DNA from: Lytechinus pictus
Taxonomy: Eukaryota
Direction: 5' to 3'
Length of the DNA: 64,000 bases
Assembly: GCF_037042905.1 (NCBI RefSeq)
Contig: NC_087248.1
Coordinates: 1,860,001-1,924,000 of the forward strand
The stretch's first letter is position 1. Every line of letters starts with the position of its first letter. Of this stretch, positions 21,824 to 60,081 are shown piece after piece. The notes under the pieces were generated by a model that worked only from the letters and a program-made list of their open reading frames with translations, searched no databases and was not told the origin of the DNA. The position numbers and the translations under genes are program-made.

Positions 21824-22690
21824 CAGTGCGTATCAAAATAAAGTTACACTTTGAAAAGCCCTGGGAATAAAAAAATATACAACATGTGGGTATTTTTTTC
21901 ACATATAAACTTGGGTTTGGGTCTCATCTATCCAATGAAAGTAAAGGTTTTGACAGAATGTTACACTTGAGTGAGCACTGTTCATTTTTTGTAAAGCTCG
22001 CAGAAATCTGTTTGCGCAGAAATGCTCATTTTCAGGCTGTGTCAAGGGGAAAGGGCGAAATCAAACTTACCCTTCGAAACATTTCTCATACATTTCCCTT
22101 GCACTTTTAGTCAATTGAAATAAAACGGATACATTCAAGCATTTTGTATAAATTTTGCCACCCAAATTGAAATTTCAACACTTTAGTAAGCACAACCTTT
22201 ACCCTTTTTGTGCCAGCTGGATCTGAGGACATAACCGAATCTGAACAAAAGTTTATATCAGACATCTCAGCATTTTTTCACTAATTTTTATCATTTAAAG
22301 TGAGTTTACATTTCATTTTTCATTTAATACTAGTTTCTCCACACTTTTTCCAAGCTTGACAATGATTAACAAAATGAAAATCAAGCTTAAGCCCTTTCAT
22401 GTAAATCACAGCTCAGTGTAAAGCAAATATCGTCACGATGACCTCGGTGTGTGGGGGAGTGGGGGTGGGGCGCAATGTACTCTCTGAAGTGTTTTGGGCA
22501 AGGAAACAATTAAAAAAAAAGGAAGAAGATATCTTGAAATTAATTTACTAGCTAAATTCCACGTGTTCTTCATGATTAAGATCTACTTTTATTCGCATAA
22601 CTATTTTCAAAATTCTGCGCAAATCACTTTTCACTAACTTTTCAGAAGTAAGTGGTGCTCACTCAAGCATAATATTTTTCGACAGTGTTA
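21824..22690 (+). mobile_element. Tc1/mariner-like MITE, right end lost
   Basis: TA|CAGTGCGTATCAAAA start; internal inverted matches (TGAGTGAGCAC ~21968 / GTGCTCACTCA ~22655); truncated by the tRNA-bearing repeat. Confidence 0.55.
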
Positions 22691-22699
22691 TCGTGGCCG

Positions 22700-22889
22700 C
22701 GGCGTTCAAAGCTGGAGGCCCGGGTTCGATTCCCGGCAGAGACATTTTTTCGGCATCACCAATTTTTCCAAAGGGTAGATAGCTCTGGGGAACCTTGATT
22801 TAAGCTACGCCTACCATTGTTCTCTTCTATCACAAAATATTTAAATAAAAAAGAGTTGCCAAAGCTGCTGTACATGTGTAACTTCACAC

Positions 22890-22933
<44 letters not shown>

Positions 22934-23400
22934 AAAGTTATACATGTACAACAGCTTTGGCAACTCTTTTATTTAAATATTGTAAAGAACTGGATGAAGA
23001 GAACAATGGTAGGCGTAGCTTAAATCAAGGTTCCCCAGAGCTATCTACCCTTTGGAAAAATTGGTGATGCCGAAAAATGTCTCTGCCGGGAATCGAACCC
23101 GGGCCCCGAGCTTTGAACGCCGGTGCCTTAACCACTAGACCACAGAGACGGGTTAGTGGCTAGGGCGACCCGATCCGATTGACCGTCAGATAGACAGATT
23201 TTCGACACTATACCAATTATAATTTCCTTTGTCGGGTGAAGGTGGGTTTCGAACAATGACAAGCCGCCATGCTTCAGCTGGATCAAAGCTAATGCTTTGA
23301 TACAGTACACGTATGGGAGAAAGTATACAAATGTGTAAAGTTATACATGTACAACAGCTTTGGCAACTCTTTTATTTATGTTCTCTTCATCCAGTTCTTT

Positions 23401-23407
<7 letters not shown>
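22700..23407. mobile_element. Unclassified (TA)n-associated tRNA-bearing repeat: full unit 22929-23407 plus inverted partial copy 22700-22891
   Basis: ~190-bp inverted arms around (TA)n; 47-bp direct repeat (22929-22975 / 23332-23378); 29-bp inverted repeat (22977-23005 / 23379-23407). Confidence 0.8.
23078..23149 (-). tRNA. tRNA or tRNA-like gene with anticodon TCA (opal-suppressor type), tRNA-Glu-like body
   Basis: GTCTCTG TG GTCT AGTGGTTA AGGC A CCGGC GTTCAAA GCTCG GGGC CCGGG TTCGATT CCCGG CAGAGAC A then TTTTT; 72 nt with A and B boxes; one anticodon-stem mismatch. Confidence 0.7.

Positions 23408-23463
<56 letters not shown>
23404..23463. repeat. (TA)n microsatellite; a second tract at ~22893-22927
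   Basis: Direct reading. Confidence 0.95.
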
Positions 23464-23466
<3 letters not shown>

Positions 23467-24374
23467 GACGAAATGAAAGGTTTATTTAATGTTCATCATG
23501 GTTTTGGAACGGTGAAGAGCGTAGAATAATTTTAATCCATGTATATAGTTGATTAGGGAAATTCAGTAATCATTTGTAATCGATTATGTATATAGGTATT
23601 TTCTTTTAAAATATTTAAGCACTATTTGCTGAGAAATAATGATGTTTACAACTGTTTGATTATGTTAGATGTTTACATTTAATCGTTTTTTACTGTTCCA
23701 GTATGAATATTAGAGACAATTACCATTGTTGTTGTTGTAAAGATTTATTTCATAACTCTAACTGTTTTTAAAAGATGATTAAATTTGAATTCTTGACAAT
23801 CTCCCTCCCCGATCATATGATTGGCAGTAAAAGGTTTCTAACCAAAACTCTGTTCAATTTTTATTGGAACCTGCTGCGACAGGATGAGCTTGATTTCTAT
23901 TCAGCAAAGTTATAAGAACTGAATTATTTGATTCTTGCTTGTCGTTATTTTGTTGTATGGAGCTACAAGTATACATGGTCGGAAGAGCAGAGGTACTGAC
24001 GAGAGAAGGAGTGAGAATACTGACTTTACCGAGAGAAGATACGGAAAATACTTAATTTACCGAGATACTGAAAATACGGAATTTACTGAGAATACTGACA
24101 TTACTGAGAATACTGAAAATACTGAGATAAGTGAGGATATTGAATTAAAGTACTGAGATTCCGAAATACTGAAATTACGGAGATGCTAATTACTGGAATG
24201 ACTGAAATAATGGAGATACGGAATGAAGGAGATGTTGAAATCCAGGAGATATAATCTAAGTTACTGGGAAGGAGCAAAGAGTCAGAAGTGAAAAAGACGG
24301 ACTTTACACCAACTGGGTGTATATTGCATCCGAAACGAACCAGCTCTTCAGGAGAGAAAGTCGGTTCGGCTACA
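23464..24374 (+). mobile_element. Putative 5' LTR of a Gypsy-like retrotransposon
   Basis: TGTGAC...GCTACA followed 2 nt later by a PBS and then gag; contains a degenerate 9-bp ACTGARAAT array (~23990-24220); left boundary inferred. Confidence 0.65.
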
Positions 24375-24415: not shown

Positions 24416-25297
24416 ATGGATGTTCGAGGACAAAGAAGGCGTGCGGTATCGCCGGCTGAGGTGATGGAGAAGTTGGAGAGCAGTATGGCGGAGATTGATC
24501 AGATGATGGCGGAGATACGGACCAGGATGGGGTTGACGCCATCATGGGGGACTGATGAGGCGTGCGGTAGGCATGGGCCGAGAGTTCAGTTCCGATCTTC
24601 ACAAACTGAAAACTTCAGAGCAGCAAGGATACCGCAGCCTACCGAACTGGAACAAGAATTTTCCAGGACTGAGCTACAAGATACCCGACATACACGAGCA
24701 CCCGAGATGAGAACCGTATCAGGAAATGTACTGCTAAATCATCACCAAGATAGATCGAAGGAACCAAATATTGTACCAGACAAGTTCGACGGCCGCACGC
24801 CGGTTGAAGACTATCTGAACCATTTTCAGGCGTGCATTGTGGTAAATCGCTGGGGAGAATCTGAGGCATTGGAATATCTGGCAGCCTGCCTGAGAGGTTC
24901 TGCGGTTACACTGCTTACACAGAAAACAGGGAGGCGACTCAGTTACTATGAACTAGTGGACAGAATGAGGAAACGATATGGTCCAGGTGGTAAGGCAGAG
25001 GTCTAACTTGCAGAGTTGGGACAGCGACGGAGAGGACCAGGAGAAACATTTCAGGAGTTAGGACAGAGCATAAGAGATCTCACGGCTCTCGCCTATCCTG
25101 AATTTGATAAAGACGGACTAGACCGGTTGGCGAGGAGACACTTTCTAGATGCGATTGTAGATTGCAAAATCCGAGAAGGGGTTTTCCGCTCGCAACCAAG
25201 ATCACTGGACGAGGCAATAGAAGCTGCTTTGAATGCAGAGGCGTTCTCAAGGATGGAGGATGAAAGGTGGGAATACCAGCAGACCAGGATGCTGTAA
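24416..25297 (+). pseudogene. Gypsy-type gag with in-frame stop at 25004-25006; no pol or 3' LTR seen
   Basis: PDKFDGRTPVEDYLNHF..NRW..LAACLRGSA and QELGQSIRDL..AYP..FLDAI..PRSLDEAIEAAL lie in the same frame across a TAA. Confidence 0.85.
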
Positions 25298-26474
25298 CCC
25301 GAGATGGCGACGGAATTCATGTCCGTACTGGCACACCCTTCTTGAGAGTGAGAATGAAAAGACTCATTCAAGACTTTCTTCTTGAAATGGAATCGGAAGA
25401 GCCAGACTCAGATGACGGAAATTCAAGAGAGAACTATCCCGAAGCTGGTCAGGCTAGTGTTAAAACATCAGAGGGGAACTCCTTTTGCAGAATTGTTGTA
25501 CAGCAATTGGGTTCTATCTCGGCTGATTGTGAGGAACAAGAGACAAGGAGCACTAAACGACTTAGTGGTACAGCAATCCCTGGAGGACAATTCGATAGAG
25601 CTGGAATATAGGTCACAGGCCTGATGGACGAGGGAGTCACAGGTGTGGAGCCATTTGGTGGGTGCACTTTGGCGGGCGTGCCGAAGCAGTTGCAGAACCA
25701 GTTGGCTGAGACTGTGCAGGATTTTCCAGTTGAATGTCGGGAATCGGTGCCAAGATCGTTTGAGAACTTCGGTAGTGTCTCACTTGAGAGCTGCTCGCTT
25801 GAGAAAGTAGATCATGTGCAGCAAGACAGCATGGAGCGTGAAACGGAAGAGGTACGACCATCCAAACAAGAGAGCAGAAGATATCTAGACCAGATGAACA
25901 GCGATGGAGGAAGGCGACAGAGATCACAGGCGGGTCGCATGAACAGGAGCCAGGGTGTTAAACTGAAAACCTGGTCATTTATTGGGGGTTATTTTGCCAC
26001 TTTTAGGTCAAGATAGGATTTTGTGAGAAATATAGGTCTACAGTCTTCAACACATCAGTTCCCATCCGGTTTCCTAAAAAAATCAGATTCCTTTGGCGCG
26101 GCGTTGCAGTGACTTCAAAATAAATATGATTACTAAGGGTGCGGTATATACCCGAGCGTTTTTTTTATACGACTGTCCGTCAGGAGTGGGTGCAATGGCT
26201 GACAATTCCATCAAAGCAGAAAAGGTGACCCTTAACCAAACTTGCACCTCTACAAAATATATTTATAAAGGGCTGTATCTAGAATCATCAGGAGCATAGT
26301 GACAAGAAATAAGGGTCCCGATCTCTTATAGCTTGGTCACAACTCGTCACGCATCTCCTTACGACCACACATGTTTTACCTGCTGCGAATTTGGTAGAAA
26401 ATCCTTGCGTCCTTAGGCAAGGGTCCACAATTTTTCATCAAGCATGCAATAGCATGCCTATGCATAATAATTAA

Positions 26475-37886: not shown

Positions 37887-40800
37887 ATGGAGTTCACTAT
37901 CTACAAATACCCATGTGCCTGTTGTATGAAACCGGTTAAGAACAATCAGAAGGGACTGAAGTGTACCAAATGCAATCAATGGCTACATATCATTTGTGCT
38001 GGTATTCCTGAAGAGATCTACAATGACAAGTCAGAGAACTTTTTCGGTTGGCAATGCAACATTTGTATTTTTAAGGACATGCCCTTCTATAATGAATCGG
38101 AAAATATCACTATTCGAGAGTCAGTTAATGTCAGTACAAATACTACCAACCGAAACATTGCTTGTATTCATGGTTTATACTACCAAGAATTACGTGGTAA
38201 TGGCCTTAATATCGCCCATTTAAATGTTAACAGCCTACTGAGACACATTGAAGAAGTGAGAACATTTGTTAAGACTAACAAGGTTCAGGTATTCGCAGTT
38301 AATGAAACAAAAACAGATGAATCTATCTATGATAAAGAAATTATGATTGACGATTACAATTTGGTTCGTAAAGACAGAGTTCGACAGGGTGGTGGAGTAG
38401 CCATTTATCTCCACAAATCATTACATTTTGAAAAAATAATTCATGAATTCCTTGATGATTTAGAAGCACTTGTTATTAAGGTTTATCTCAAGTTTTCAAA
38501 ACCTCTCATCGTATCAACTTGGTATAGACCACCATCCTCAGATATTGGAATCTTTAATTTGTATGAAAGATTTCTAATCGTTATTGACACAATGAATTGT
38601 GATATAGTTATAGCAGGTGACGCAAACTGTGATATCATAGCTAAACCCTTATCAAGCATGACCAAGAAATATGTTGATATAAATAATGTTTACTCTCTGG
38701 TCCAAGTTAATACCAAAGAAGCAACAAGAATCACAAATCTTTCTGCTACATTGATTGATCACCTATTAACAAACAACACCAAAAACGTAGTGAATCATGG
38801 TGTAATTCATAGCGGAATGAGTGACCATTCGATTAGCTTCCTGACCTGGAACTCTAAGATTTGTGCTCAGCCCAAATTTATCACTTTCAGAAGTTGCAGC
38901 AAGCTCAATATTGATGACTTTAGAAATGATATTCGTAACCAGAATTGGGAAAGTATAGATCAATGTAATTCAGTTGATGACGCTGTCGATTTATGGCAAA
39001 ATATGTTTTTACAAGTTGTTGACAAACACATGCCAAATCGTTCAAAAAGAATAAGTACAAAGGGTTCCCCTTGGATGAATGCAAATATTTGTAAACTTAT
39101 GAAAAAACGTGACAAACTTAAAAGAAAAGCTTGCAAACTGAAAGATGAAAAACTTATGTGCGAGTACAGAATATTACGAAATAAGGTAACAAATGAAGTA
39201 AGGAAATCAAAGAAACGGTATTACTCTGATAAATTTACAAATTTTAAGGTAAACCCAAAACAGACTTGGAAAACCTTAAAGTCCATTATTCCGAATAAAA
39301 AACGTGAAATACCCACAGTTTCGTCTAACTCGGATTGTAATACTGAAACTGCTAACCTATTCAACACTTACTTTGCAAATGTAGGGAGACAATTAGCCAG
39401 TGAAATACCCGATATGAACCTCCATACAGAAAATGGTAATTATACAAATGAGACTTTTGCATTCACTCAGGTGAACGACCATGATGTTTTGAAAATCATA
39501 AGAAATCTTAAAAACACTAAGTCTGTCGGTGTTGATAAGATATCTGTCTTTGTCTTGAAGGCATGCTCTATGGAGATATCAATGAGTATTGCTAAGTTGA
39601 TTAATTTATCTTTGTCAAGTGGTATATTTCCGCAACAATGGAAAAAAGCTAAGATTATCCCAATTCACAAAGGTGGCGATAAAAATTCTCCTTCGAATTA
39701 TAGGCCCATCTCAATTTTGCCCTGCGTATCTAAAATACTGGAAAGGGTTGTCCAACGGCAAGTTTTAGATTTTTTTGCGAAATAATTATATTCTGACACC
39801 TGCCCAATCCGGTTTTCGGCCAAGGCACTCAACCATTACCACTCTCCTAAAGGTAACCGATGACTGGTTTCACTCAGTCAATCTGAAACATTACATTGGG
39901 GCCGTCTTCGTCGATTTAAAAAAAGCATTCGACACCGTGAATTGTGATATTCTTTTGAAAAAATGAATAACTTAGGTATTTCTGGCACACCATCCTTATG
40001 GTTTCGAAGTAACATGTCTAACCGGGTTTGTAGGACTCTTATTAATTCGGAACTCTCTTATGAATCAGTTATTAACTGCGGTGTGCCCCAGGGATCACTC
40101 CTGGGGCCACTGCTCTTTATATTATATGTCAATGATCTAGTGAAATGTATTAATACATGTCATATCCAATTGTATGCGGATGACACCGTTTTGTATTTTT
40201 TACACCCCTCCATAGATAGAATCAACGAGGCCCTGAACTCAGATTTAGAAAATATGTACCAATGAATGTGCCAGAATAAGTTAAGTGTTAACTGTAAAAA
40301 AACGGTCTGTATGCTCATTGGAAGCAAGAATATGATTTTTAAACAAAATGTCCTTCATGTTTCCTTAAATAATACCCCATTAGAACAAGTTCATCATGTC
40401 AACTACCTAGGCATCATAGTTGATGATTATTTGAATTTCAATTTGCATATAGACAACATGTTGCAAAAAATAGGTCAATTAGTCGGTTTTCTGGGAAGAT
40501 TGCGGCGATCCCTAAGTGAATCGATTCTGAAATTAATATATAGTTCATTGATCCTCCCCTACTTTGATTATGGTGATGTTGTTTACGATGCATCCTTTAG
40601 GAAATACACAGACCGCCTTCAAAAACTGCAAAACAGAGCAGGTCGTATTATACTCCAAATTAAACCCGAATCTCATATATCTATTTTGGAAATGCATGAT
40701 ATACTTAATTGGCAATTGTTGGACAAAAGAAGAAGCGATCATTCCCTTATTCTCATGTATAAGATCATGAATAATCTATCTCCAAAATATTTAAGAAATG

Positions 40801-41320
40801 AATTTGAGTTAGTATCACATACGTATCCCTCCCGTTTCGGAACCAAATTTAAATTACCCAAACCAAGAACAAATTACCTCAAAAGATCCTTCAAGTATAA
40901 AAGCGCCATGGCTTATAATTCCCTTCCTCTTCACATTAAATCATCCCCTAGTATTAACATTTTCAAATCTAAGATTGTTGATCTGTAGCCACATGTACTC
41001 CGGTACCCCCTCCCCCATTCCCTGTTAGGTTTGCACCCCTTCCTTTTTTTTCCTTTTTTTTTTCGGTGTTTTTTTTTCGGTGTTTTATCTAAATATGTTT
41101 ACTGTTGATATTTGTATTTTCATTCATCTTCTGTACATCTGTTATTTTAATGTGGTTATATTGTGTCTAAATTATACGTTAATGTCAAATGTTATGTACC
41201 CCACGGAAGACCAGCGTGACTGTGCCAGTCACGCTGAATGTGGGCTATCCACCGTATTTTATTGTATATAATTGTGCTTTTAATACGGAAATAAATACTA
41301 CTACTACACTACTACTACTA
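37887..41320 (+). mobile_element. Near full-length CR1/L2/Crack-group LINE (PHD - APE - RT), inactivated
   Basis: CxxC..CxxCxxWxHxxC..WxCxxC; HLNVNSL, NETK, GGGVAIY, GDAN, IDH, SDH; YRPISILP, VDLKKAFDTV, GVPQGSLLGPLLF, YADDT; frameshifts ~39780 and ~39962, stop 40263-65; AATAAA + (CTA)n tail. Confidence 0.95.
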
Positions 41321-59825: not shown

Positions 59826-60081
59826 NNNNNNNNNNNNNNNNNNNNNNNNNNNNNNNNNNNNNNNNNNNNNNNNNNNNNNNNNNNNNNNNNNNNNNNNNNN
59901 NNNNNNNNNNNNNNNNNNNNNNNNNNNNNNNNNNNNNNNNNNNNNNNNNNNNNNNNNNNNNNNNNNNNNNNNNNNNNNNNNNNNNNNNNNNNNNNNNNNN
60001 NNNNNNNNNNNNNNNNNNNNNNNNNNNNNNNNNNNNNNNNNNNNNNNNNNNNNNNNNNNNNNNNNNNNNNNNNNNNNNNNN
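59826..60081. other. Assembly gap (256 N)
   Basis: Direct reading. Confidence 0.99.

What the first reader, a model, noticed from the sequence alone, without database searches (positions are those of the whole stretch)
23073..23149. Canonical-shaped tRNA with a UGA-reading (TCA) anticodon carried by a repeat
Seen: the minus strand folds into a 72-nt cloverleaf with a perfect 7-bp acceptor stem, 4-bp D stem, perfect 5-bp T stem, 4-nt variable loop and anticodon loop GT-TCA-AA, followed directly by TTTTT. The inverted partial copy (22700-22750) has the same loop, the better-pairing 3' strand GCTGG, and a T6 run. Known: tRNA-Sec has a long variable arm and a non-7/5 stem, so this is not tRNA-Sec. 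The D and T arms resemble tRNA-Glu. SINE heads usually lose acceptor pairing and read on into a body instead of terminating. Inference: a mobile element may encode a stand-alone Pol III tRNA-like RNA, possibly an opal suppressor or a private primer. The G at position 32 and one stem mismatch argue against a fully functional decoder.
Basis: partly seen in the sequence, partly recalled or inferred. Interest (0 to 1): 0.85.

Follow-up and report, generated by a model that had tools for sequence, protein, structure and literature searches.

The report
Repeat-borne tRNA look-alike, UCA anticodon
A well-formed tRNA-shaped gene that would read the UGA stop codon is real, but it is one module of a roughly 400-base mobile repeat present thousands of times in this marine invertebrate, so it is most likely transposon cargo and not a working stop-codon suppressor.

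Summary
ARAGORN and Rfam both call a 72-nt tRNA at 23078-23149 (-) with anticodon TCA. It has a 7-bp acceptor stem, 5-bp T stem, 4-nt variable loop and G32, and is followed by T5. An inverted, 5'-truncated copy lies at 22695-22750.

It is not a lone gene. Public reads show that all of 22930-23377 is a very high-copy repeat: 9,768 DNA contigs in one run, and it is also present in related species. The unit is about 403 bp, often head-to-tail, with many copy ends in TA-rich sequence or (TA)n. The family consensus repairs this copy's one stem mismatch. No major variant was listed in the anticodon loop.

The locus holds a full unit, a 55-nt partial tandem, a 27-nt inverted tail and an inverted truncated copy across (TA)17. 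This matches published insertion patterns of Penelope-like retroelements. There is no hammerhead ribozyme, no match to Helenus elements and no usable primer-binding site.

RNA-seq gives no sign of a discrete tRNA. It is not tRNA-Sec. Decoding is neither shown nor likely, because of G32, the thousands of copies and CpG-type decay.

The scan has noted this family before on other DNA; two earlier follow-ups reached the same kind of verdict.

The parts
23078..23149 (-). 72-nt tRNA-shaped gene with anticodon TCA (UCA) and G32. It has a private C at tRNA position 42 (window place 23108) that breaks the 28-42 pair.
   Evidence: ARAGORN. Rfam RF00005 at 54.4 bits. Cloverleaf check. Family consensus at 23108.
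23056..23077 (-). Pol III terminator-like signals: T5 directly after the tRNA (23077-23073) and a second T5 at 23060-23056. About 35-56% of family copies have T6 at the first run.
   Evidence: Sequence. 'Put in behind 23072: A' in 399 of 711 RNA reads and 68 DNA contigs.
22931..23333 (-). One unit (about 403 bp) of the high-copy repeat. On the tRNA strand it reads: 174-nt leader, tRNA, T5, 66-nt body, 27-nt segment B', 47-nt segment A.
   Evidence: Joints that 'go back' 403, 401, 395 and 365 bases, including 109 RNA reads. Depth is high over all of 22930-23377 and about zero beyond 23378.
23324..23378 (-). Partial tandem copy (pseudo-LTR-like): a 55-nt direct repeat of 22921-22975, 95% identical.
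   Evidence: (D4).
23379..23405 (.). 27-nt fragment (29 nt with its flanks) that is the exact reverse complement of 22979-23005. It may be the short 'tail' extension seen at Penelope-like insertions. This junction is at about single-copy depth.
   Evidence: exact match. (depth falls to 74-858 in DNA and about 4 in RNA).
22695..22892 (+). Second copy, inverted and 5'-truncated at about tRNA position 23. It holds the tRNA 3' part (to 22744), T6 (22745-22750), the body (82 nt 100% identical to the right copy), and a partly deleted B' and A.
   Evidence: (I1, I3).
22893..22926 (.). (TA)17 between the 3' ends of the two inverted copies.
   Evidence: Loose ends of other copies at 22970-22984 run into TA-rich sequence or (TA)n.
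23404..23463 (.). (TA)30 bordering the composite on the right.

Best explanation
The sequence is a structurally intact, tRNA-Glu-like gene module inside a roughly 403-bp non-autonomous repeat. The module has internal A and B boxes and its own T5/T6 stop.

The repeat is present thousands of times. It forms head-to-tail arrays, suffers 5' truncation, and many of its copy ends border TA-rich sequence or (TA)n. This is the insertion signature published for endonuclease-bearing Penelope-like retroelements of the Naiad/Neptune type.

This locus is a composite of one full unit, a 55-nt partial tandem, a 27-nt inverted tail, and a second, inverted, 5'-truncated copy across a (TA)17.

The UCA anticodon and G32 were most likely fixed in the founder copy, possibly by a one-base slip in a UUC-A Glu loop, and have been inherited since. 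The cloverleaf persists because the family is young and homogeneous, and perhaps because the element gains from the Pol III/TFIIIC-binding module. The product, if made, is most likely not an aminoacylated UGA decoder.

Shown: the tRNA shape, the repeat status, the unit length, the locus architecture and the consensus stem. Inferred: mobilisation by a Penelope-like element, the Glu origin and the lack of decoding.
For: The tRNA call is supported.

Repeat status: 9,768 contigs of DNA run X1 and 674 of organism C (X10) lie on 22930-23400. Summed word depth is 0.2-1.3 million, against about 74 at the locus-specific junction. Joints going back 395-403 bases show a tandem unit. Loose ends at 22970-22984 run into TA-rich sequence or (TA)n. 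Depth rises from the leader (about 0.55 M) through the tRNA (about 0.8 M) to the body (about 1.2 M), as 5' truncation would give.

Locus architecture. The published Penelope-like hallmarks are 5' truncation, partial tandems (pLTR), an adjacent inverted truncated copy, a 30-40-bp tail and (TA)n targets; Naiads lack hammerheads and non-autonomous relatives form head-to-tail arrays (PMC8557442).

The consensus cloverleaf has no mismatch, and the window copy's C42 is private. Most listed differences among copies are G>A or C>T.

RNA-seq X23 shows equal depth on both strands, continuous depth across both tRNA borders and no start or end pile-ups.

Fifteen nucleotides (GUGGUCUAGUGGUUA) are identical to the human tRNA-Glu-CTC 5' fragment printed in PMC13604853.

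Repeat families are already known to generate hundreds of predicted 'suppressor' tRNAs (Helenus, Sup-CTA; PMC10886601).
Against: Between organisms A and C the consensus of the tRNA plus 3' body shows 0 fixed differences in 172 nt, against 7 in 196 nt of the leader (Fisher p = 0.016). So some constraint acts on that half. For the tRNA alone p = 0.19.

Every invariant tRNA nucleotide, both promoter boxes and the terminator are kept in the consensus, which is more than a passenger needs.

Only 40 of 102 variable places were shown by read laying, so the anticodon's conservation and the decay pattern are incompletely seen.

The RNA-seq library would not capture 75-nt tRNAs, so absence of a discrete RNA is weak evidence.

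No autonomous Penelope-like partner was found in the window. Here the inverted copy lies at the 3' side, not the 5' side drawn as typical.
Confidence: 0.68

Rival explanations
1. The tRNA module works for the element and not for translation. Either it is a Pol III/TFIIIC entry point, or it is an RNase P/RNase Z 'punctuation' site that cuts multimeric array transcripts into unit-length RNAs. The second option would play the part that the hammerhead ribozyme plays in tandem non-LTR retrozymes derived from Penelope-like elements.
For: The architecture matches retrozymes: tandem units of about 400 nt with Penelope-like insertion structure (10.64898/2026.07.22.740005). There is no hammerhead, and Naiad-type elements also lack one. 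The cloverleaf is fully paired in the consensus. The tRNA plus body is more conserved between species than the leader (p = 0.016). The anticodon would be irrelevant, which fits G32 and a stop anticodon.
Against: RNA-seq depth runs unbroken across both tRNA borders, and no places where molecules begin or end were found. Both strands are equally covered. The T5/T6 directly after the tRNA would stop Pol III before the rest of the unit.
Confidence: 0.14
2. It is a working UGA-decoding (opal suppressor) tRNA, charged perhaps by TrpRS. A73, G1-C72, C35 and A36 are eukaryotic Trp identity elements; this rests on my own knowledge and was not tested.
For: The cloverleaf, promoter boxes and terminator are canonical. 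UCA is seen in both copies here and was reported for other copies by other first readers (unchecked). No major anticodon-loop variant is listed.
Against: G32 is the family state, and purines at position 32 are very rare in decoders (established knowledge of the 32-38 pair). Thousands of active suppressor genes would be highly deleterious. Copies differ by CpG-type decay, and this copy has a broken stem. No processed RNA was seen.
Confidence: 0.04
3. It is a 'private primer': its 3' end primes reverse transcription of a partner retroelement.
For: tRNAs are the usual primers of LTR retroelements.
Against: No sequence complementary to its 3' end plus CCA occurs in the window; the only hits are the gene itself, at 3 mismatches. 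The one TGG-type site inside the unit (23269-23254) matches no tRNA 3' end listed, and its TGG is changed in 62% of RNA reads (place 23267). Penelope-like elements use target-primed reverse transcription and do not use tRNA primers.
Confidence: 0.02
4. It is a Helenus-type TRIM: a miniature LTR retrotransposon carrying a tRNA-like Pol III unit. The tandem unit would be LTR plus internal region.
For: Helenus occurs in bivalves and other invertebrates, forms tandem arrays, and its tRNA-like parts are followed by T runs (PMC10886601). A CA|TGG junction and a purine-rich tract next to a TG exist in the unit.
Against: Eleven motifs from the tRNA and the unit were searched in the published Helenus consensus file. 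Seven were absent and none of the matches was to this element. The primer-binding-like site fits no tRNA and is not conserved. Copy ends lie at (TA)n and not at TG...CA borders.
Confidence: 0.06
5. It is an ordinary single-copy tRNA pseudogene or a chance cloverleaf.
For: There is only one tRNA call in the window.
Against: Thousands of near-identical copies exist in several runs and species. The covariance score is 54 bits.
Confidence: 0.01

Closest known systems
Non-autonomous derivatives of Penelope-like elements (Naiad/Neptune-type insertions; animal non-LTR retrozymes)
   Same: Units of a few hundred bases in head-to-tail arrays. Partial tandems (pseudo-LTR), adjacent inverted 5'-truncated copies, a short tail and a preference for (TA)n (PMC8557442), all seen at this locus or in the reads.
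   Different: There is no hammerhead ribozyme. A complete tRNA-shaped Pol III unit sits inside each unit instead. No similarity to an autonomous partner could be tested. The inverted copy here faces the 3' end.
Helenus (TRIMp3) miniature LTR retrotransposons with tRNA-like sequences (Kojima 2024, PMC10886601)
   Same: A small mobile repeat carrying a tRNA-like Pol III unit. It inflates tRNA predictions, including 'suppressor' types. It forms tandem arrays and is present in marine invertebrates.
   Different: No sequence match to the published consensus sequences. No convincing LTR ends, primer-binding site or polypurine tract. Most Helenus tRNA-like parts do not fold as tRNAs, whereas this one does.
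tRNA-derived SINEs
   Same: tRNA-related A and B boxes, 5' truncation, a simple-repeat end and high copy number.
   Different: The tRNA is not at the 5' end: a 174-nt repeated leader precedes it. It keeps a perfect acceptor stem and is followed at once by T5/T6. In contrast, the termite SINE family met by accident has an unpaired acceptor and reads into its body.
tRNA-Sec
   Same: UCA anticodon.
   Different: It has the 7/5 arms, 4-bp D stem, 4-nt variable loop and A73 of an ordinary tRNA, and not the 9/4 arms, long variable arm, 6-bp D stem and G73 of eukaryotic tRNA-Sec.
Cytosolic tRNA-Glu
   Same: Fifteen nucleotides covering positions 7-21 are identical to the human Glu-CTC 5' fragment. 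It also has the 4-nt variable loop and the CCCGGGUUCGAUUCCCGG T arm (the T arm comparison is from memory).
   Different: The acceptor stem is shifted by one pair, the anticodon stem register is shifted so that a stem G sits at position 32, and the loop reads UCA instead of UUC or CUC.

Membership tests
tRNA-Sec | 9/4 (or 8/5) acceptor/T arms, 6-bp D stem, long variable arm, G73 | tested here: not met
   7/5 arms, 4-bp D stem, 4-nt variable loop, A73. The best Rfam clan member is RF00005.
Functional cytosolic elongator tRNA gene | Canonical cloverleaf with the invariant nucleotides, A and B boxes, and a terminator | tested here: met
   The sequence shows U8, A14, G18G19, G15:C48, UUCGAUU and T5. 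The consensus has no stem mismatch.
Functional cytosolic elongator tRNA gene | Pyrimidine at position 32 and an anticodon for a sense codon | tested here: not met
   G32 and UCA in both copies here. No major variant is listed there in the family.
Functional cytosolic elongator tRNA gene | A mature, CCA-ended, aminoacylated RNA of about 75 nt | not testable with these tools
   Only poly(A)-type or total RNA-seq could be laid. It shows no ends at the tRNA borders, but it would not capture tRNAs.
tRNA-derived SINE | tRNA-related head at the element's 5' end, transcribed into the body with no terminator in between | tested here: not met
   The 174-nt leader upstream is as repeated as the tRNA. T5/T6 follows the tRNA directly.
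Helenus / TRIM | Two LTRs with TG...CA ends, a primer-binding site complementary to a tRNA 3' end, and a polypurine tract | tested here: not met
   The TGGCGGCTTGTC site fits none of the tRNA ends. Its TGG is altered in 62% of RNA reads. The motif searches gave no match to this element in the published consensus sequences.
Penelope-like-element type insertion (non-autonomous) | Frequent 5' truncation | tested here: met
   The left copy is truncated at tRNA position about 23. Depth rises toward the 3' body.
Penelope-like-element type insertion (non-autonomous) | Partial tandem (pseudo-LTR) and multicopy head-to-tail insertions | tested here: met
   55-nt direct repeat (D4). Joints going back 395-403 bases in DNA contigs and in 109 RNA reads.
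Penelope-like-element type insertion (non-autonomous) | Adjacent inverted truncated copy | tested here: met
   Arms 22695-22892 and 22929-23127. It lies at the 3' side, whereas the typical drawing has it at the 5' side.
Penelope-like-element type insertion (non-autonomous) | Insertion bias for (TA)n microsatellites | tested here: met
   (TA)17 and (TA)30 at this locus. The loose ends of many other copies run into TA-rich sequence or (TA)n. These runs could also be internal microsatellite expansions, so the feature is met only as an association.
Penelope-like-element type insertion (non-autonomous) | 30-40-bp tail extension at one end | tested here: inconclusive
   A 27-29-nt inverted fragment at 23379-23405 next to the partial tandem. 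Whether it is the published 'tail' cannot be decided from one locus.
Penelope-like-element type insertion (non-autonomous) | 3' end shared with an autonomous element encoding RT and GIY-YIG endonuclease | not testable with these tools
   No such element is in the window (the only RT is an AP-endonuclease LINE).
Non-LTR retrozyme | Type I hammerhead ribozyme in every tandem unit | tested here: not met
   No hammerhead family appears among 80 Rfam matches at E up to 10 over 22400-23500.

The most novel reading that the evidence does not exclude
The family supplies a real UGA-reading tRNA that serves retroelements and not the host. The carriers look like dependants of Naiad-type Penelope-like elements. 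In clams and spiders that clade has evolved ORFs with several in-frame UGA codons (PMC8557442). A transposon-borne UCA tRNA could then help translate such ORFs, as phage-borne suppressor tRNAs do for recoded phage genes.
Probability: 0.03. Interest if true: 0.9.

Novelty: new variant of a known kind. Interest (0 to 1): 0.35.

Why it matters
In practical terms, this family will flood any tRNA annotation of this genome and its relatives with thousands of 'opal suppressor' or false 'SeC' calls, as ARAGORN does here. It should be masked before tRNA or selenoprotein analyses.

Biologically, it would be a non-autonomous element with Penelope-like insertion behaviour that carries a complete tRNA-shaped Pol III unit where related tandem elements carry a hammerhead ribozyme. 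That raises a testable question: do tRNA-processing enzymes or TFIIIC substitute for the ribozyme in the element's life cycle?

It also offers a natural test of how a cell tolerates thousands of promoter-competent genes with a stop-codon anticodon.

Tried and rejected
1. Fetching other family copies.
- The single metagenome scan, with a D-arm/B-box pattern, returned only an unrelated tRNA-derived SINE of termite-gut metagenomes.
- Three viral-contig scans and one scan of bacterial/archaeal genomes gave only phage tRNAs or nothing.
- No family alignment or stem-covariation test was therefore possible.

2. Helenus/TRIM. Eleven motifs from the tRNA and the unit were searched in the published consensus file. 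Seven were absent, and the four that occur matched unrelated Helenus elements. The primer-binding tables do not fit.

3. 'Private primer'. There is no complementary site in the window.

4. SINE with a LINE partner. The window's only LINE ends in (TAC)n and shares nothing with the unit. One pattern search was mis-specified by me and says nothing.

5. Hammerhead or other ribozymes: none. The many 'microRNA' matches there are just the long palindrome.

6. Literature. Exact-sequence search found no paper printing this tRNA. Oyster satellitome papers do not mention tRNA, and I could not establish the species.

7. Organism identification by protein features was uninformative.

8. Reference metazoan tRNAs for isotype scoring could not be obtained from tools. 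Only the Glu 5' half was verified from a paper.

Full report
**What is there**

ARAGORN reports a single tRNA in the 64-kb window, at 23078-23149 on the minus strand, anticodon tca. It labels the gene 'SeC' only because of the anticodon. Rfam's general tRNA model matches the same 72 nt from model position 1 to 71 at 54.4 bits (gathering score 29, E 6e-9), and nothing else in the window reaches any family's threshold.

Laid on the cloverleaf, the sequence has:
- a perfect 7-bp acceptor stem;
- a 4-bp D stem with one U-G;
- a perfect 5-bp T stem;
- a 4-nt variable loop;
- an anticodon stem with one C28-C42 mismatch and one G-U;
- the loop G32-U33-UCA-A37-A38;
- discriminator A.

U8, A14, G18G19, A21, the G15:C48 pair and the UUCGAUU T loop are all present, and so are the A box (UGGUCUAGUGG) and B box (GGUUCGAUUCC). 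T5 follows the last base, and a second T5 lies 12 nt further on.

An inverted copy at 22695-22750 shares the loop, carries GCTGG in the 3' stem strand and has T6. Its homology starts near tRNA position 23, and it is not itself callable as a tRNA.

**It is not tRNA-Sec**

The 7/5 arms, 4-bp D stem, short variable loop and A73 are those of an ordinary elongator tRNA.

The segment GUGGUCUAGUGGUUA (positions 7-21) is identical to the 5' fragment of human tRNA-Glu-CTC as printed in PMC13604853. The T arm is the Glu/Gly type (one search shows the same string in Drosophila tRNA constructs).

Relative to Glu, the anticodon-stem string CGGCG sits one base further 3', which puts a stem G at position 32. 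The string UUCA in the loop then reads as U33 plus UCA. A one-base register slip in a UUC-A Glu loop is thus a simple origin for the 'opal' anticodon. This is inference, not a test.

**It is one module of a very abundant repeat**

- Depth: summed word depth is 0.2-1.3 million over 22930-23377 and collapses to about 74-860 beyond 23378.
- Identity of the X1 contigs to this copy: 2,789 at 99% or more, 3,719 at 95-99%, 2,594 at 90-95%, and 666 below 90%.
- Spread: runs labelled with four further organisms hold its 31-mers.
- Tandem arrays: joints that 'go back' 403, 401, 395 and 365 bases, one of them carried by 109 RNA reads, show that head-to-tail arrays of a unit of about 403 bp are common.

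On the tRNA strand the unit reads: a 174-nt leader, the tRNA, T5, a 66-nt body, a 27-nt segment (B'), and a 47-nt AT-rich segment (A).

Many copies break off into TA-rich sequence or (TA)n next to B' or A (loose ends at 22970-22984 and 23332). Depth rises from the leader (about 0.55 M) through the tRNA (about 0.8 M) to the body (about 1.2 M), as expected if copies are often 5'-truncated.

**What the family says about the tRNA**
- At window place 23108 nearly every other copy, in both species and in RNA, has the base that makes G42. The family consensus therefore has a fully paired anticodon stem, and this copy's mismatch is private.
- The only common polymorphism inside the tRNA (23082; position 68 A to G) keeps the pair as U-G.
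- The first T run is T6 in 35-56% of copies.
- No difference in the anticodon loop appears among the 40 best-supported variable places. However, 62 lesser ones were not printed, so conservation of UCA is probable and not proven.
- Both copies in this window have UCA, and about 29 unchecked first-reader notes elsewhere in the genome say the same.
- Between organisms A and C the consensus differs at 7 of 196 leader positions and at 0 of 172 positions of tRNA plus body (Fisher p = 0.016). For the tRNA alone p = 0.19. Some constraint or homogenisation therefore acts on that half of the unit, but it cannot be pinned on the tRNA.
- Most listed differences among copies are G>A and C>T, the pattern of methylated-CpG decay.

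**Expression**

RNA run X23 (raw paired reads) covers the whole unit at 200-500 reads in the quarter of the run that was read. Numbers are equal for both mate orientations. Depth is continuous across both tRNA borders, there are no places where molecules begin or end, and 39% of reads run on into unrelated sequence. That is what copies embedded in other transcripts would give.

It is not evidence for a discrete tRNA, and such a library would not capture one. The small run X32 contributed one 322-nt contig and is uninformative.

**What kind of repeat**

Classes tested and not met:
- SINE: a repeated leader precedes the tRNA, and a terminator follows it.
- Helenus/TRIM: the motif searches in the published consensus file gave no match to this element. 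The only CA|TGG site fits none of the tRNA 3' ends tabulated, and its TGG is altered in 62% of RNA reads.
- Retrozyme: no hammerhead among the Rfam matches at E up to 10.

The locus itself consists of:
- a (TA)30 run;
- a 27-29-nt fragment that is the exact inverse of 22979-23005;
- a 55-nt partial tandem copy;
- a full unit;
- a (TA)17 run;
- a second, inverted copy truncated inside the tRNA.

An earlier follow-up of this scan (s1-317488) suggested a Penelope-like insertion pattern, and I checked that against the literature. Craig et al. 2021 (PMC8557442) describe for Naiad, Neptune and related endonuclease-bearing Penelope-like elements:
- heavy 5' truncation;
- partial tandems forming pseudo-LTRs;
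- an adjacent inverted truncated copy;
- a 30-40-bp tail at one end;
- (TA)n as the preferred target;
- tens of thousands of copies in invertebrates;
- absence of hammerheads in Naiads;
- non-autonomous relatives that make head-to-tail arrays.

Five of these features are met here. The tail is inconclusive, and similarity to an autonomous partner cannot be tested. I therefore file the carrier as a probable non-autonomous dependant of a Penelope-like element, with moderate confidence.

**How it most likely works**

The tRNA module is competent on paper to bind TFIIIC and to give a Pol III transcript of about 77 nt ending in the T run. Nothing shows that the product is processed, charged or used.

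Against decoding:
- G32 is the family state.
- The anticodon matches no sense codon.
- Thousands of promoter-competent suppressor genes would be very costly.
- Copies decay.

For some function:
- The cloverleaf is fully intact in the consensus.
- The half of the unit that holds it is more conserved between species.

The most attractive functional alternative is that the module serves the element. It could be a Pol III/TFIIIC site, or an RNase P/Z cleavage signal that replaces the hammerhead of related tandem elements. The RNA-seq gives this no support.

**Comparison and novelty**

Repeat families that generate hundreds of predicted suppressor tRNAs are known; for example, every Sup-CTA prediction in two rust fungi comes from Helenus. 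The general phenomenon is therefore not new. Two follow-ups of this scan on other windows reached the same kind of verdict.

I found the following combination described in no paper of the library: a complete tRNA with its own terminator, inside a roughly 400-bp unit, with Penelope-like insertion behaviour and no ribozyme. I rate it a new variant of a known kind, with modest interest.

Noticed in passing
window 23013-23333 (places 23066, 23082, 23267, 23316, 23333): RNA reads carry a set of variants at 40-72% that make up only 0.4-27% of DNA contig depth. So the transcribed copies seem to be a biased subset of the family, or the individuals differ. 23082 is A>G on the tRNA strand.
   Followed up: partly
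window 23048: Fifty-six RNA reads leave the unit here into a (TC)n run, so a subfamily or an expressed locus carries a (TC)n insertion in the 3' body.
   Followed up: no
window 22981: Seventy RNA reads have a different, non-TA sequence (ending ...GGGACGCACTGTATATATTG) in place of segment A next to B. The 3' part of the element therefore exists in at least two module versions.
   Followed up: no
window 37887-41320: Non-LTR retrotransposon with a PHD finger and an AP-type endonuclease (Pfam PF00628, PF03372) and a downstream RT-like ORF. It ends in a (TAC)n tail near 41300 and is unrelated to the tRNA repeat.
   Followed up: partly
window 24008-24224: A run of 9-nt-period repeats (ATACTGARA-like) just upstream of three ORFs (24416-26016) that have no Pfam match.
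   Followed up: no
L003-L122 (termite-gut metagenome contigs): A large tRNA-derived SINE family shares the TAGTGGTTAAGGC D arm and GGTTCGATTCC B box but has an unpaired acceptor and reads on into a body. It is a useful contrast to the element studied here.
   Followed up: partly
L124:7662-7735: A phage contig encodes a CTA-anticodon (amber-reading) tRNA whose acceptor stem and T arm happen to equal those of the tRNA studied here. The resemblance is coincidental.
   Followed up: no
window 59826-60081: A run of 256 N (assembly gap or masked). It was left untouched.
   Followed up: no
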